Positions 5,413-29,941 of a stretch of 64,000 bases of DNA are shown one piece after another; within the stretch, counting starts at the first letter, position 1; each line of letters starts with the position of its first letter. Origin of the DNA: Camelus ferus (Eukaryota); the NCBI RefSeq assembly GCF_009834535.1, contig NC_045705.1:71796001-71860000 (forward strand), in the 5' to 3' direction. Made by a program: the position numbers and the translations under genes. The notes beneath the pieces are model-generated. The model searched no databases. It was not told the origin of the DNA and saw only the letters and a list, made by a program, of their open reading frames with translations.

Positions 5413-9774
<4,362 letters not shown>

Positions 9775-12857: not shown

Positions 12858-14452
12858 CTAGTCGAACAAGCCAAACCCCATGTCATCGTCTGACTCCTCT
12901 GACTCCTCCTTCTTCTCCTCCTTCTTTTCCTCTGCTGTGGGGAGAAAGAGCGTTGAGACCCCAGTGCAGGCCACCCTCCCAGCTGAGACCCCAGTGCACC
13001 TGCAGGGGTGGCTGCCTGAGCCCGCACTTACCTACGGCTGGGGCAGAACCTGCAGCAGGAGCTGCAGAGCCTGGGGCAGCTGGGACGGCCACAGCCCCGC
13101 CAGCAGGCACGCTGGCCAGCTTGCCGATGCCTACAGAAACCAGAAAGGGGAGGTGAGACCACGGCAGGTGCTTGGCCTGAACGCTGCCTAAGGATAAAGA
13201 AACAGTCTGCCCATGTATCAGGACCTGTATCACAGACTTCTGCTCTCCCAGACAGAAGATTCTGTCACTGCTCCCAAAAACTGGCTTTTAGGAATCTCTC
13301 CAGCAGGACCACACTGCCCCACCCAGGACGTAAGTCGGATAAACACATCGAAGATCAGGCAGGAACAGACTCTCACCTCTGGCAGCAAGCTCACCACGTA
13401 CCCAGGGACAGAAACAGCTCCCCAACAGCTCAACTTCCACACAAGCCCCACCAGCTTGATATCGCTAGGAAACCACGTGCCCAGCAAAGGAGAGCAGTGG
13501 CTGTGGTCCTCCCGGGCACCCCTGCTCTCTGCTTGAAACGCCTCTCACCAAGAGGAAAAAGTGAGACTTGTTTACAAACAGGCTCAGTGAGAGCACTGCC
13601 CCTGGGGTGTCTAGAAGCGCCCGTGAAGTGAGCTCTCTCAAACCCTGCTCACTCCTGCGGGTAAGACTTCTAGGATGCTCTAGTCCACAAGCGAAACCTG
13701 GCAGGTCACAGGCTGACCCGCAGGGATTAGGATGGACCATGAAAACAAAAGCTCCAACCACAAGCTCACCCTGAGCAATGACGTCCTCGATGTTCTTTCC
13801 GTTCAGCTCACTGATGACCTGCAGTGGAGGACCAGCGCAGTTAGAGGCCCACCATCACGGCCCCTCTAGCCCAGCCATCATGACCCACGCTCAAGAGAGG
13901 TAAGTGAGACGTGCCATGCGTGGTGACTAACACCACATTTTTAACACGTTACTTAAAAGAATGCGAAATATCTCAATTTTTATTCAACACATGTTAAAAT
14001 AACATCCTCAGTAAGATAGATGGAAAAAAGCTGAACTTAGCTACTTTCGTTAAAATAAAAGTTGCTAAACTACCTAAGTTACAAGTGAGCTGTACTGTGT
14101 TGTATTCCCACTGAGCCCTACTAATGGGGACTTTACCTCTACCCCAACTTGTTTCCTTTTGGCCGTATCGGTATCTCAAAAGGGCACCCAATGACCACAT
14201 GCGCTGGCGCAAGCCTCCCCTCAAACCCGCGGGCACGTCAGCCTACACTTTCCCGAAAGGAAGAGAGGGACTCCCTGTGCGCAGGATATAGAGTTGGCCG
14301 GGGGCTTCGGGTCCCAGCGGGGCGGCTACCTTGTTGAGCCGGTCGTCGTCTGCCTCGATGCCCACGCTGTCCAGGATCTTTTTGATGTCCTTGGCGCTGG
14401 GGGAGGCATTGCCCCCGAGCGCGGCCAGCAGGTAAGAGGCGACGTAGCGCAT
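12858..14452 (-). CDS. RPLP2: 60S acidic ribosomal protein P2, 115 aa
   Basis: Exons 14452-14330 (MRYVASYLLAALGGN...), 13818-13770, 13130-13032, 12934-12858 (EEKKEESEESDDDMGFGLFD*) total 348 nt. Confidence 0.99.
13605..13739 (-). ncRNA. SNORA52: H/ACA box snoRNA SNORA52 (ACA52) in an RPLP2 intron
   Basis: Minus strand reads TGGTCCATCCTAATCCCTGC...GGTTTCGCTTGTGGACT, closely matching human SNORA52 as recalled. H box AGAGCA at 13681-13676; ACA box at 13610-13608, 3 nt from the end. RPLP2 is the known host gene. Confidence 0.93.
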
Positions 14453-14653
14453 CCTGAAGTTGCGGAGAGGGCGGCGGCGTTGCCGGGAGGCCTCCCGCCC
14501 CCACCCCGGCCCGTGCGCGGCCGCGCGTGGCCCGGCCCGAGGGCCCCCTCTGAGGCCCAGCCCGCGCCCTGCTCCGCACCCGGCCCCGCGCCCTGCCTGC
14601 CCTCCGCGACGCTCACGACGGCGACTGGCCCGTGCCCCGGCCTCCCCACTCAC

Positions 14654-14715
14654 TCGGCAGCGGGGGAGAGGCCTCACGCGTGCAACCTCGGCGGCGTCAA
14701 GGACGGAAAGGAAGG
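14654..14715 (-). other. RPLP2: RPLP2 non-coding exon 1 with 5' terminal oligopyrimidine (TOP) tract
   Basis: Minus strand CCTTCCTTTCCGTCCTT at 14715-14699. Donor CGA|GTGAGT after 14654. Exon 2 begins 1 nt before the ATG (acceptor at 14453). Confidence 0.8.
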
Positions 14716-15260
14716 CGCCGGTGCTGGGGGCGGGGATAATCCGCTACCCAGAAGCCTCCGGGACCTGCGCGCCGCGCCCCGTGAAGGCGCCTCCGAGTGA
14801 CGTCACACGTGCTCAGCCAGCGAGGACGCCGGAAACGCCGTTGTCCCGTCCCGCACCACAAAGGCGAAGGGCAGTTCTGGGGCTGCCTTCTTGTATAGGA
14901 TGGGGCGAGTGTCCCTCGAAGTCCCTGGGGGCTGCGGGGCGAAGCGAGGCGCGAACCCGAAGTGCAGCGTTTCTCCCTCAGGGCTCCCAGGATGCCACGC
15001 GGCGCCTACAGCTCCCAACATGCAGCGCGGCTTCCACGTCCCGGTCACATCTCTGCAGGAGCAGCCGACGAACTACAAGTCCCATGGTGCGTGCCTCCCG
15101 GAAGTGCGGCTGCGCCACGGCCTGAGCGGGCCGCACGTGGCCCGAGCGCAGCTGCTCTGGTCCGACCCGCGGCCCTTCCGGCTCTCCGGTGGTTCCCGCC
15201 CGCTGACCGGCGGGGGCTGGTGGCGGTCTTGCCCAGCCTGGCCCAGTGAGGTAGGCGAGC
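14716..15260. promoter_or_regulatory. RPLP2 promoter CpG island with CRE, ETS/GABP and ACTACAnnTCCC (ZNF143/THAP11-type) motifs
   Basis: TGACGTCA 14798-14805, ACTACAAGTCCCA 15072-15084, CCGGAAGT 15098-15105. Confidence 0.75.
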
Positions 15261-17980: not shown

Positions 17981-20900
17981 ATGGCTGCAGTGGCGGAGGG
18001 GCTGGAGACCGAGTCAGCTGCTGTAGAAGATGCTGCAAGAGATGCTGCAGATGCTGTGGATGCAGGGCTGGGGGTGCCCCCTCTCCTGGCTGGGAACCGG
18101 CTGAGCCTGGACCTGTACCCCAGGGGCTGCCACCGGCTGCTGCACCTGTGTGCCCAGCAGGTCCCTCAGCTGCTGGAGGTGGAGTTCCTGCAGCTGAGCA
18201 GCCACGAGGACCCTTGGCTGCTGGAGGCCACCCTGGCCCGGCTGCCCTGGAGCCTGCCACGTCTCCGCTCCCTGGTCCTCAAAGGTGAGCCCTACCTCCT
18301 CCCAGCCCTGTCCCAACCCCATCTCTAGCTCCTGCCTCTGCCTCTTGGTCCTCACGGGCAAACCCGATCCCATCCCCTCCACTATTCTCTGCACAGCTCT
18401 ACCCATCCCATTTTCCCCCAAGAGGGAGCTGGCTGAGCCCCACTCCTGGGCCCTGCAGCTGCCCAGTGGGGTCCCCAGAAGACCCCTGCGTGGGTATTTT
18501 TCCTGGATGGGGGCTATCTGCTGAGATGATCCTGCGTTGTCTGTCCCTGCCTCCTCTACCTGCTGCTGTCTCTCCAGTATCTCTGTCGATCCTTGTCTGG
18601 TGGGGTTGGGGTGGAGGTCTCTGTTTCCACGCACCTATTTCCATGGCTAGCAGGGCTGAGCTGGGACCTAGGACTCTGGCTCTGAGGGTCATGTCTGCCT
18701 TTCCCCCATCCCAGGTGGGCAACGCCGGAATGCTCTGGGTGCCTGCCTCCAGGGCTCCCTGACCACACTGCCTGCCAGCCTGAGTGGCCTCACCCACCTG
18801 GCCCACCTGGATCTGAGCTTCAACAGCCTGGAGACGTTGCCAGCCTGTGTCCCACAGATGTGTGGCTTGAGCGCCCTCTTGCTCTCTCATAACTGCCTCT
18901 CAGAGCTGCCCGAGGCCCTGGGGGCGCTCCCTGCCCTCACCTTCCTTGCCAGTCACCCACAACCGCCTGGAAACACTGCCCACAGCACTGTGGTCCCTGT
19001 CCACCCTGCAGCGCCTTGATCTCTCTGAGAACCTTCTGGACACTCTGCCCCCTGAGATCGGAGGCCTGAGCAGCCTTGCTGAGCTCAATCTGGCCTCCAA
19101 CCGGCTGCAGAGCCTCCCTACCTCCCTTGGTGAGTTGCAGCCTTGGCTCACTGGGCCTGGTGGGGAGCGCCTGTCGGCCACTGCCCGGCCTGCACTCTGC
19201 CGTGGCCCCTATCTCCTCTGCGGGGCCCTGCACACACAGGCTTGCCCACTTTTGAGCCTTTTCCCCCTTGGCAGCCCCCAACTTCCCTGGCCTTTGAGGC
19301 TCCCTGCACAGGCCTGCCTGAGCTCTCTAGTCCAGCCACAGGGCAGAGACTGAAAGGGCTTCTCTGGGAGGCCCTAGTGGGAGCAGCCTGCCCTGGTGCT
19401 CCAGGCCAGGGATGGCACTGAGCAGTCCTCTGCTGGCCCTAAGCCAGTGCCTGCCCGCAGCGGGGCTCCGGTCCCTGCGGCTCCTTGTTCTACACAGCAA
19501 CCTTCTGGCCTCGGTGCCCGCCAGCCTGGCCCGCCTCCCACTGCTCACCCGGCTGGACCTGAGGGACAACCAGCTCCGGGACGTGCCCCCCGAGCTATTG
19601 GACGCCCCCTTTGTGCGCCTACAAGGAAACCCCCTGGGCAGGGCCCCCCCGGCCCCCCACAGCCCCCCAGGTAGGCTTATTGGTGTGCAGGGGCAGACCA
19701 CAGTCAGGACGCAGCTGTCCCCACCATCCTAACAACTTGCCTGTCTTTCCACAGGGACACCCGTGGTCCCAGAAATGCCCAGACTCTTGTTGACCTCAGA
19801 TGTGGACAGGTATGGTGTGGGGGAGAGGAGGGGCTGGAGAAGCACCTGTCCACGCCTCGGGGGTCTCCCTTCTCAAACTCGCCTTTCTCTGTCTGACCTG
19901 ATACCCACTCTGTCCCCTCTCAGCTTCCCCGTGACCCCTCAAGGCTGCTCTGTGACCCTGGCCTGTGGCGTCCGCCTGCAGTTCCCTGCTGGGGCCACTG
20001 CCACCCCTGTTACCATCCGCTACCGACTGTGGCTGCCGGAGCCCCGCCTCGTCCCCTTGGGTCCTCATGACTCTCTGCTCAGTGGTGTCCTGGAGCTGCA
20101 GCCCCACGGGGTGGCCTTCTTGCAGGCACAGCCAGGGCGGCTCGGGGGGCGGGTGAGGAAGGCGCGGGTCTGGCCCCAGCGCTCATGCTGCCCTTGCCTG
20201 GCAGGAGGTGGGCCTGTGGCTGCTGTTTGTGCCACCACGGGCCCGGCGTTGCCGGGAGGTGGTGGTCAGGACCCTGAGTGACAACAGCTGGAGTGACCTG
20301 GAGACCCACCTGGAGGAAGAGGCACCCAAGGTGAGGGCTGTCCAGGCCTGTCCGGGAGGGGGAGCAGCTCTACCCTAGCCCCGACCCTGTTCTCTCTAAC
20401 CCTGCCTCCGACGCCCAGCGGCTCTGGGCCCGCTGCCAGGTACCCCACTTTTCGTGGTTCCTTGTGGTTTCGCGCCCTGTGTCCAACACCTGTCTGGTGC
20501 CACCAGAGGGGACATTGCTGTGTTCCTCGGGACATCCTGGGGTCAAGGTCACATTCCCCCCTGGGGCCACTGAGGAGCCCCGGCATGTCCACATGCAGGT
20601 ACGGGCTGGGCAGCTGCCAAGGGTGGTGGGCGTGCCTCAGCACCGAGCTGAGTGTTCGGGTGGCCTGCCTGCTCCAGGTGGTGCACGTGGGCAGCAGAGG
20701 ACTGCCAGCCCTGCTGGAGGAGCCTGAGGCAGCCGCGAGCCCCTTGCTGTGCCTCACCCAGAGTGGTCCCCCAAGCTTCCTCCAGCCGGTCACTGTGCAG
20801 CTGCCTCTGCCCCCCGGCATCACAGGTGAGAGGCAGCGGCATGTATCCCTGGACTTGTGGCCCCGGGGCGGGCAGCGATGCTCAGAAGGGGAGCCCTGCC

Positions 20901-22895
20901 AGGGTGGCCTCAGCCTGCGGCCCCTCCCACCCCAGGCCTGAGTCTGGACCGCTCCCGCCTGCACCTGCTGTACAGGGCCCCTCCTGCAGCCGCCTGGGAT
21001 GACATCACGGCTCAGGTGGCGCTAGAGCTCACCCACCTGTACGCCCGCTTCCAGGTCACACGCTTTTCCTGGTCAGTGCTCCCTCTGGCTTCCTCAGTCC
21101 CTCCCCACCCGCCTGTCTGCACTGCCTGCCTCACCCCCCAGCTTCCCAGGTACTGGCTCTGGTACACCACTGCGACCTGCGTGGGGGGCCTGGCCCGGAA
21201 GGCCTGGGAGCGGCTGCGGCTCCACCGCGTGAACCTGATCGCACTGCAGAGACGCCGGGACCCCGAGCAGGTCCTGCTGCAGTGCCTGCCCCGGAACAAG
21301 GTGCGGGGTGGGGGCCGGAGGTCGCGGAGGGCCTGTCAGGAAGCCAGCCAGGTGGGGTCCAGGGGCCAGGTGGGGGCGCAGGGTGTTGGGCTCCCAGCCA
21401 GTGGGTACCCCCCAGGTGGATGCCACCCTGCGGCGGCTGCTGGAGCGGTACCGCGGCCCCGAGCCCTCAGACACCGTGGATATGTTTGAGGGCGAGAAAT
21501 TCTTCGCTGCCTTTGAGGGAGGCATCGACGTGGATGCCGGTACGCCCCCTGCCCCTGGAGAACGGCCCCTGCGGTCAGCCCCCTGGGTCCCTGCTGAGCC
21601 CGCCCCTGCCCCCAGGCCGTCCGGACTGCGTGGAGGGCAGGCTGCGCTTTGTCTTCTATTCGCACCTGAGGAACGTGAAGGAGGTGTACGTGACCACCGC
21701 CCTGGACCGGAAGGCTCAGGCTGTGAGGGGCCAGGTGAGCCAATGGGGTAGGGCCCCCTGGGCCACCTGGGCAGAGGCAGGAGCACTGAACCCCACCTCA
21801 TCCCCCCACCCAGGTGTCCTTCTACCGGGGAGAGGTGCCAGAGGAGGTGCCCGAGGAGGCGGAGGCTGCCCGGCAGAAGAAGGGCATGGATACCCTGTGG
21901 ATGGCCACTCTGCCCATCAAGCTGCCGGTGTGGCCTGGCGGGGGGCAGTGTGTGAAGGGGCAGGGGGTCGCCAGGGGTACAGGGATGGAGCCTGGGGGCA
22001 GGGGCCAAGGCTCACTGCCACTGCATCCTCCCCACAGAGACTGCGGGGGTCCGAGGGGCCAGGGCACGGGGCTAGCCTCTCCCTGGCACCTCTGAACCTG
22101 GGCGACGCTGAGACTGGCTTCCTGACCCAGAGCAACCTGCTGACTGTGGCTGGGCGCCTGGGCCCCGACTGGCCAGCCGTGGCCCTGCACCTGGGCATGC
22201 CCTACCGTGAGCTGCAGCGCATCAGGCATGAATTCAGGTGAATTCCTTTCAGCCTCCTGCCACTGGTCTCAGGCCAGCCTCAGGCCTGGGCCTGGCAGCC
22301 CGGAGGGCCCTGCTTGAGGCTGGCTGAAGTTCCGTCCACAGGAGGTGGAGCCAGGGCAAATGGGCAGGGAAGGGAGGGTCTGCCCACCCTTAGCCTAGGG
22401 ATTGAGGAACCCATCAGGGGAGGGTGAGCACCACCCTGGGTGTGGTGGGTGGTCCTGGGCTGGGCTGGGCTAGGCCGGGCCCCTCCCTCCCTCTCTCTCC
22501 CCTCTCTCCCCTCTCTCCCCTCTCTCCCCTCTCTCCCCTCTCTCTCCTCTCTCCCTCTCTCCCCTCTCTCCCCTCTCTCCCGTCCCTCCCGTCCCTCACC
22601 ATACCCCCATCATCCCCCCATCATCCATCCCCCCAGGGACGACCTGGATGGACAGATCCGCCATATGCTCTTCTCCTGGGCTGAGCGCCAGGCTGGGCGG
22701 CCAGGAGCTGTGGGGCTCCTAGTGCAGGCCCTGGAGCAGAGTGACCGGCAGGACGTGGCAGAAGAGGTGCAGGCCATTTTGGAGCTTGGCCGCCGCAAGT
22801 ACCAGGAGGGCATCCAGCGCACAAGCCTGGCCCCCGGGGACCTTGGTCCACCTGGCCCTTCAGCGTTGCAATCCCCAGAGCCTGCCCAGGCCTAG
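17981..22895 (+). CDS. PIDD1: p53-induced death domain protein 1 (LRR-ZU5-ZU5-UPA-DD); reading frame broken by a 1-nt insertion in exon 3 in this sequence
   Basis: Exons 17981-18284, 18715-19129 (415 nt; needs 414), 19461-19670, 19755-19809, 19924-20125, 20205-20330, 20419-20598 (PHFSW), 20678-20825, 20936-21071 (TRFSW), 21150-21300, 21416-21539, 21616-21734, 21814-21927, 22038-22237, 22637-22895 (death domain, ...PEPAQA*). Gene identity is certain; functional status is not. Confidence 0.95.
22481..22600. repeat. Polypyrimidine (CCCTCTCTC)n-type simple repeat in the last PIDD1 intron
   Basis: About 100 nt of only C/T, with ~9-nt periodicity. Confidence 0.95.
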
Positions 22896-24020: not shown

Positions 24021-24140
24021 CGCCTGGCGGGGGACAGCGTGGCCGCCCGGGTCCCGTCTGGACCCCCTCTAGGGGTCGAGGAGCTGAGCCGGTCCTCCAA
24101 GACGCCTTCCTGAACCCCCACCTCGCGTCTCCTTTGTCGG
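23430..24140 (+). promoter_or_regulatory. SLC25A22 CpG island and non-coding first exon
   Basis: Donor GCG|GTGAGT after 23671. A second CpG patch at about 25500-25730 has donor CGG|GTGAGC after 25665 (alternative 5' exon). The ATG exon starts at 26737. Confidence 0.65.

Positions 24141-26854: not shown

Positions 26855-29941
<3,087 letters not shown>

What the first reader, a model, noticed from the sequence alone, without database searches (positions are those of the whole stretch)
18948..19019. PIDD1 has a +1 frameshift in LRR exon 3 with a premature stop
The exon reads ...ACC TTC CTT GCC A GTC ACC CAC AAC CGC CTG..., so the homologous peptide TFLA|VTHNRLETLP switches frame at 18949-18951. 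The exon is 415 nt but must be a multiple of 3 (phase 1 to phase 1). The shifted frame stops at TGA 19017-19019, far upstream of later junctions, so NMD is predicted. All other exons stay in frame, which fits a very recent loss-of-function allele or an assembly error better than old pseudogenisation. Two rescue routes are visible. Skipping the symmetric exon 3 restores the frame and deletes most LRRs. Re-initiation at the exon-5 Met (PEMPR, ATG near 19775) would give an LRR-less ZU5-ZU5-UPA-DD protein. Natural PIDD1 loss would affect caspase-2-dependent control of centrosome excess and ploidy.
Basis: partly seen in the sequence, partly recalled or inferred. Interest (0 to 1): 0.8.

Follow-up and report, generated by a model that had tools for sequence, protein, structure and literature searches.

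The report
PIDD1 frameshift is an assembly artefact
The one-base frameshift in the wild camel PIDD1 gene is really in this sequence, but it is almost certainly an assembly error that wrote both versions of an A/G variant side by side, so the gene is most likely intact and ordinary.

Summary
The PIDD1 LRR exon at 18715-19129 is 415 nt. The reading frame switches at 18951/18952, and the old frame stops at TGA 19017-19019.

The window is identical to Camelus ferus assembly GCA_009834535.1. NCBI already labels that assembly's PIDD1 a 'LOW QUALITY PROTEIN'.

At the site the window reads GCC-AG-TC. Dromedary, domestic Bactrian camel and alpaca read GCC-A-TC (Ile). An older, independent C. ferus assembly reads GCC-G-TC (Val), and it has no mismatch to the window in the surrounding 3.9 kb. 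So the extra base is the second allele of the only C. ferus-specific SNP in that block. This is the signature of a consensus error at a heterozygous site.

In 25 kb compared with two other camel assemblies, this assembly carries five private +1 insertions. It has no private 1-bp deletion outside repeats and about five clean private substitutions. That is an error spectrum, not a mutational one.

With base 18951 skipped, the 2733 coding bases I checked have no stop and differ at 2 nt from domestic Bactrian camel. dN/dS is 0.17-0.18.

Verdict: artefact, about 0.93. A real segregating null allele remains possible at about 0.05. Interest is low. This scan holds many other '+1 frameshift' notes for the same genome, and they probably share this cause.

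The parts
17981..22892 (+). PIDD1 coding region (ATG to last codon), 16 coding blocks
   Evidence: The 913-aa NCBI model for this assembly (P0205) maps exactly in 16 blocks. Pfam finds LRR_8, ZU5, Peptidase_S68 and Death on exon translations. Many exons are 100% identical to Camelus PIDD1 proteins.
18715..19129 (+). LRR exon, 415 nt in this assembly and 414 nt in all other camelid assemblies examined
18951..18952 (+). Dinucleotide AG where the other assemblies have a single base. A (Ile) in C. dromedarius, C. bactrianus and Vicugna pacos; G (Val) in the older C. ferus assembly. This is the frameshifting extra base.
   Evidence: NCBI's corrected model skips 18951.
19017..19019 (+). TGA reached in the shifted frame
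24093..24093 (+). A second +1 insertion (T) private to this assembly. It is outside any repeat and is absent from the older C. ferus assembly, C. bactrianus, C. dromedarius and alpaca.
14460..14460 (+). Private +1 insertion (T), about 5 nt upstream of the RPLP2 ATG on the minus strand
8469..8469 (+). Private +1 insertion (A) in the non-coding part of the PNPLA2 region
29778..29778 (+). Private +1 insertion in a C8 run (C9 here)

Best explanation
The frameshift is a consensus or polishing error in the chromosome-level Camelus ferus assembly GCA_009834535.1, not a feature of the camel's gene. Codon 181 of PIDD1 carries an A/G transition: ATC (Ile) is ancestral in camelids and GTC (Val) is seen in wild camel. 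The sequenced animal, or its read set, most likely contained both alleles. The consensus step kept both bases in series (AG) instead of choosing one, which lengthened the exon from 414 to 415 nt. The real gene is then intact and encodes a normal LRR-ZU5-ZU5/UPA-death-domain PIDD1. Shown here: the lesion is private to one assembly, it coincides with the SNP, this assembly has an excess of private +1 insertions, and the rest of the gene is intact and constrained. Inferred: that the animal was heterozygous, and the exact software step that produced the doublet.
For: (1) The window is 100% identical over 8915 bp to GCA_009834535.1 CM020777.1. The PIDD1 model for that assembly is named 'LOW QUALITY PROTEIN' (XP_032346199.1) and skips base 18951. 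(2) At the site the window has GCC-AG-TC. C. dromedarius GCA_036321535.1, C. bactrianus GCA_048773025.1 and Vicugna pacos GCA_048564905.1 have GCC-A-TC. The older C. ferus assembly GCA_000311805.2 has GCC-G-TC. (3) The older C. ferus assembly matches the window over 3924 bp around the site with 0 mismatches and exactly 1 gap, which is this base. In that block the G is the only C. ferus-specific substitution and the extra base is the only window-private indel. An unrelated insertion would land next to that SNP and carry the other allele with a chance of about 1e-4 (my estimate: 2/3924 x 1/4). (4) In the 25-kb three-way alignment, the window-private events are five 1-bp insertions (8469, 14460, 18951/2, 24093, 29778), four of them outside long repeats. 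There is no private 1-bp deletion outside repeats and there are about five clean substitutions. The C. bactrianus assembly has no private non-repeat 1-bp indel, and dromedary has 12 indels to 91 substitutions. The insertion at 24093 is also absent from the older C. ferus assembly. (5) With 18951 skipped, 2733 coding nt have no stop, 2 nt differences from C. bactrianus and 33 from alpaca, and dN/dS of 0.17-0.18. (6) Unchecked lead: this scan holds 93 'frameshift' notes in 560 windows of this genome, many of them '+1' in conserved genes.
Against: No reads or RNA-seq from this animal could be examined, so its heterozygosity at A/G is inferred. The 'LOW QUALITY' label records only that annotators corrected a frameshift, not that reads disprove it. 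The other assemblies come from other individuals, so a rare allele private to this animal cannot be formally excluded. I could not read the assembly paper (Ming et al. 2020). Another paper says only that its contigs are much longer than those of the Illumina assemblies (PMC7468183). That it is long-read based is my recollection.
Confidence: 0.93

Rival explanations
1. A real, very young 1-bp insertion allele of PIDD1 segregates in wild Bactrian camels and was captured by this assembly, heterozygous or homozygous in the sequenced animal. It would truncate the protein after LRR 4 and probably trigger NMD.
For: The sequence as deposited carries it. Everything else in the gene is intact, which a very recent event would also predict. 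Wild camels are a small, inbred population in which null alleles can drift (general knowledge).
Against: The insertion is absent from the other C. ferus assembly and from three other camelid assemblies. It sits exactly on the only C. ferus-specific SNP of the 3.9-kb block, and the inserted base equals the other allele. The same assembly shows a non-biological excess of private +1 insertions nearby. The prior for a private frameshift in any one gene is well under 1% (general knowledge). The local error rate of about one +1 per 5-6 kb would hit a 2.7-kb CDS in roughly a third or more of cases.
Confidence: 0.05
2. Two-step real history: ancestral A, then insertion of G (AG, frameshifted), then loss of A (G, frame restored as Ile181Val). 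The window would preserve the intermediate allele.
For: All three states (A, AG, G) are seen in assemblies.
Against: This needs two indels at one site plus persistence of a null intermediate. A single A-to-G transition explains A and G, and nothing independent supports the AG state.
Confidence: 0.01
3. The extra base is real but harmless because of splicing. The AG doublet creates ccttccttgccAG, a good-looking acceptor inside the exon, or the exon is skipped, so a functional isoform is still made.
For: The exon is phase 1 at both ends, so skipping it keeps the frame. The pyrimidine tract plus CAG is visible in the sequence.
Against: No transcript evidence exists. This still needs the insertion to be real, which the cross-assembly data argue against. 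Skipping would delete about 138 residues of LRR, which are conserved at dN/dS near 0.18.
Confidence: 0.01

Closest known systems
Consensus or polishing indel errors in long-read, collapsed-haplotype genome assemblies (frameshifts that NCBI flags as 'LOW QUALITY PROTEIN')
   Same: A single-base insertion private to one assembly, corrected by the annotators. It is accompanied by other private +1 insertions in flanking DNA. A camel-genome paper discusses uncorrected PacBio indels that truncate predicted proteins as a known problem (PMC7468183).
   Different: The insertion is not in a homopolymer. It is a doublet of the two alleles of a SNP, a less commonly described form of the error. The read-level cause was not examined.
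PIDD1 (p53-induced death domain protein 1), scaffold of the caspase-2-activating PIDDosome
   Same: Domain set LRR, ZU5, Peptidase_S68 autoprocessing motif and Death domain. Position between RPLP2/PNPLA2 and SLC25A22. 98-100% identity to annotated camelid PIDD1.
   Different: As deposited, the reading frame is broken in the LRR exon. The second autoprocessing motif reads RFSW, not HFSW, a state shared with most other cetartiodactyls.
Unitary pseudogenes or natural gene knockouts in mammals
   Same: A frameshift with an early stop in an otherwise conserved single-copy gene.
   Different: There is no second lesion, the lesion is not shared with relatives or with another individual of the species, and there is no relaxation of constraint.

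Membership tests
PIDD1 orthologue | LRR + ZU5 + S68 autoprocessing motif + C-terminal death domain | tested here: met
   Pfam LRR_8/LRR_4, ZU5, Peptidase_S68 (below its cut-off on a 95-aa piece) and Death on exon translations. The full 913-aa model maps exactly.
PIDD1 orthologue | Conserved neighbourhood (RPLP2 and PNPLA2 on one side, SLC25A22 on the other) | tested here: met
   RPLP2 peptide on the minus strand at 14246-14743. Patatin, Ribosomal_60s and Mito_carr genes flank PIDD1 in the collinear C. bactrianus and C. dromedarius loci.
Real gene loss / unitary pseudogene | The inactivating lesion is reproduced in independent assemblies or individuals of the lineage | tested here: not met
   Absent from the older C. 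ferus assembly, C. bactrianus, C. dromedarius and Vicugna pacos.
Real gene loss / unitary pseudogene | Further lesions (stops, frameshifts, lost splice sites) elsewhere in the gene | tested here: not met
   2733 coding nt with no stop once 18951 is skipped, and only 2 nt differences from the intact C. bactrianus gene. There are no other window-private changes in coding blocks.
Real gene loss / unitary pseudogene | Relaxed selection (dN/dS approaching 1) | tested here: not met
   Pairwise NG86 dN/dS is 0.17-0.18 for camel-alpaca and for camelid versus another artiodactyl. This is uninformative for an event only thousands of years old.
Assembly consensus error | The difference is private to one assembly while another assembly of the same species lacks it | tested here: met
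   GCA_000311805.2 versus the window: 0 mismatches and 1 gap in 3924 bp, the gap being this base.
Assembly consensus error | Excess of the same error type in surrounding sequence compared with the natural mutation spectrum | tested here: met
   Five private 1-bp insertions, no private non-repeat 1-bp deletion and about five clean substitutions in 25 kb. The comparison assemblies do not show this.
Assembly consensus error | Raw reads do not support the assembled base | not testable with these tools
   No read data are reachable. No camel contigs were found in the protein or metagenome collections for this exon.

The most novel reading that the evidence does not exclude
The 415-nt exon is a true allele: a very young PIDD1 null segregating in the critically endangered wild Bactrian camel. 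Carriers, or rare homozygotes, would be natural knockouts of the PIDDosome sensor for extra centrosomes.
Probability: 0.05. Interest if true: 0.45.

Novelty: not a real feature. Interest (0 to 1): 0.07.

Why it matters
As a biological claim it matters little. PIDD1 is almost certainly intact in camels, so nothing follows for caspase-2 or ploidy control.

The practical value is for the scan. This assembly (GCA_009834535.1) carries roughly one spurious +1 insertion per 5-6 kb in the region examined. Other '+1 frameshift' findings from this genome, with many already noted, should be checked against C. bactrianus GCA_048773025.1, C. dromedarius GCA_036321535.1 or the older C. ferus assembly before being read as gene loss.

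The doublet also points to a probable Ile181Val polymorphism in wild camel PIDD1.

Tried and rejected
- **Independent camel sequences for the exon.** A search of the 5.8-billion-protein collection with the window's 160-aa ORF found only other mammals, the best at 68% identity. An exact-pattern scan of JGI metagenome contigs allowing either allele or the doublet gave 0 hits. So no read-like evidence was obtained.
- **A second broken site as a sign of decay.** Rejected as decay: the same Arg is present in pig, hippo, cattle, sheep, white-tailed deer and several whales.
- **The private insertion at 8469 as proof of error.** I checked whether it breaks the essential PNPLA2 coding sequence. It lies in non-coding sequence, so it gives no such proof.
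- **The assembly paper (Ming et al. 2020).** It is not held, so the sequencing technology is not documented here.
- **Exon skipping, re-initiation at the exon-5 Met and a cryptic acceptor created by the AG.** These were considered only as consequences of a real insertion and were not pursued once the insertion proved private to the assembly.

Full report
**What is in the sequence.** The exon runs from 18715, after a cccAG acceptor, to 19129, before a GTGAGT donor, and is 415 nt long. The frame starting at 18717 reads GQRRNALGACLQGSLTTLPASLSGLTHLAHLDLSFNSLETLPACVPQMCGLSALLLSHNCLSELPEALGALPALTFLA. It then runs into SHPQPPGNTAHSTVVPVHPAAP and a stop. That stop is the TGA at 19017-19019. The frame starting at 18715 carries VTHNRLETLPTALWSLSTLQRLDLSENLLDTLPPEIGGLSSLAELNLASNRLQSLPTSL from 18952 onwards. 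Both halves match LRR_8 and LRR_4. Other exons match ZU5, Peptidase_S68 and Death.

**Which gene and which genome.** A full-length PIDD1 representative was found with an internal two-exon piece and used to collect mammalian orthologues. Camelus PIDD1 proteins match many window exons at 100%. The 90%-identity cluster of the dromedary protein contains PIDD1 from C. dromedarius, C. bactrianus, Vicugna pacos and C. ferus. The C. ferus entry from the 72.4-Mb chromosome record is named 'LOW QUALITY PROTEIN' (XP_032346199.1). The locus encoding it (GCA_009834535.1, CM020777.1) is 100% identical to the window over 8915 bp. So the window comes from that assembly, and its annotators had already met and corrected this frameshift. 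Mapping their 913-aa model back onto the window gives 16 exact blocks covering every residue. Residue 180 ends at 18950 and residue 181 starts at 18952, so they dropped base 18951. The same mapping shows the exon is phase 1 at both ends, and 414 nt is the required length.

**The decisive comparison.** I fetched the PIDD1 locus from four other camelid assemblies and read the site.

| Assembly | Sequence at the site | Codon 181 |
|---|---|---|
| C. dromedarius GCA_036321535.1 | CTT GCC ATC ACC | Ile |
| C. bactrianus GCA_048773025.1 | CTT GCC ATC ACC | Ile |
| Vicugna pacos GCA_048564905.1 | CTT GCC ATC ACC | Ile |
| C. ferus GCA_000311805.2 (older) | CTT GCC GTC ACC | Val |
| Window (C. ferus GCA_009834535.1) | CTT GCC AGTC ACC | frame broken |

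- A is therefore the ancestral camelid base and G is a wild-camel variant (Ile181Val).
- The window has both bases one after the other.
- The older C. ferus assembly matches the window across 3924 bp around the site with no mismatch and a single gap, which is this base.
- In that block the G is the only C. ferus-specific substitution, and the extra base is the only window-private indel.
- An unrelated true insertion would fall next to that one SNP and carry the alternative allele with a probability of order 1e-4. This is my estimate: 2 positions in 3924, times 1/4.
- A consensus step confronted with reads of both alleles explains the doublet directly.

**Error spectrum of this assembly.** I aligned window 7977-32990 with the collinear 25 kb of C. 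bactrianus and C. dromedarius.

- Events private to the window are five 1-bp insertions (8469 +A, 14460 +T, 18951/2, 24093 +T, 29778 +C in a C-run), one microsatellite length change, one ambiguous deletion inside a CT-rich repeat, and eight substitutions.
- Three of the eight substitutions lie in that same repeat.
- Outside repeats, that makes four +1 insertions, no -1 deletion and about five substitutions.
- The C. bactrianus assembly has no private non-repeat 1-bp indel.
- The dromedary branch shows 12 indels to 91 substitutions, which is the usual kind of ratio.
- The insertion at 24093 is also absent from the older C. ferus assembly and from alpaca.
- The two C. ferus assemblies thus differ by two non-repeat +1 insertions and one substitution in about 8 kb of clean overlap.
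- This is not a natural mutation spectrum. From general knowledge, small deletions outnumber insertions and indels are a small fraction of substitutions.
- The spectrum indicates roughly one spurious +1 per 5-6 kb here, enough to hit a 2.7-kb coding sequence often.
- The scan's own notebook lists 93 'frameshift' notes in 560 windows of this genome. Many are '+1' in conserved genes such as KRT13, OTOG, WDR72, ANKLE1 and EEF1D. Those notes are unchecked, but they fit.

**State of the rest of the gene.**
- With base 18951 skipped, the 2733 coding nt taken from the exact-match blocks contain no stop.
- They differ at 2 nt from C. bactrianus, 6 nt from dromedary and 33 nt from alpaca.
- Pairwise dN/dS (NG86) is 0.17-0.18 within camelids. 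It is the same against an unnamed artiodactyl PIDD1 on a metagenome contig (L001, about 85% identical in DNA).
- There is no sign of erosion. A real lesion would have to be extremely recent.

**The second 'lesion' noted by the scan.** Arg replaces His in the second autoprocessing motif (RFSW, 21058-21071). This is not specific to camels. It occurs in alpaca, pig, hippopotamus, cattle, sheep, white-tailed deer, humpback whale, beluga, pygmy sperm whale and a beaked whale. Delphinids, muntjacs and every non-artiodactyl examined have HFSW. It cannot be counted as a second hit in a dying gene.

**What could not be done.**
- No reads or transcripts from wild camel are reachable.
- The protein collection held no camel ORF for this exon, and a metagenome scan for either allele or the doublet gave nothing.
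- The assembly paper (Ming et al. 2020) is not held.
- Another paper states only that its contigs are much longer than those of the Illumina-based camel assemblies. The same paper discusses uncorrected PacBio indels that truncate proteins as a known problem in camel assemblies (PMC7468183).
- That the assembly is long-read based is my recollection, and the heterozygosity of the animal is an inference.

**Verdict.** The interpretation 'loss-of-function allele of PIDD1' is not supported. A true private null allele keeps about 0.05. Interest is low. The useful outcome is a warning about +1 insertions in this assembly.

Noticed in passing
window 21058-21071: The second PIDD1 autoprocessing motif reads RFSW instead of HFSW. 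The Arg is shared by camelids, pig, hippo, cattle, sheep, Odocoileus, humpback whale, beluga, Kogia and Mesoplodon. Delphinids and muntjacs have His, as do all non-artiodactyls checked. This looks like an old cetartiodactyl state with CGC/CAC flips at a CpG. Whether PIDD-CC is still produced in these species is an open question.
   Followed up: partly
window 8469, 14460, 24093, 29778: Four further single-base insertions are private to this assembly relative to C. bactrianus and C. dromedarius. The one at 24093 is also private relative to the older C. ferus assembly and alpaca. The one at 14460 lies about 5 nt upstream of the RPLP2 start codon. They are probably assembly errors of the same kind.
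   Followed up: partly
window 21073-21150: The 78-nt intron directly after the RFSW motif is in frame and free of stops. NCBI's 939-aa 'isoform X1' models in camel and alpaca retain it, inserting 26 residues right at the autoprocessing site.
   Followed up: partly
window 19457-19465: The acceptor of the exon after the LRR exon is a tandem CAGCAG (NAGNAG). It could give isoforms differing by one Ala.
   Followed up: no
window 22474-22600: A CT-rich repeat (translating as LSP/SLP runs) in the last PIDD1 intron differs in length among all camel assemblies. It accounts for most of the apparent private substitutions there.
   Followed up: no
L001 and L002 (ENA metagenome assemblies ERZ27291714 and ERZ27291704): Metagenome contigs carry a mammalian PIDD1 locus about 85% identical to camel, with an intact LRR exon. 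This is host DNA from an unnamed artiodactyl-like mammal in a metagenome.
   Followed up: no
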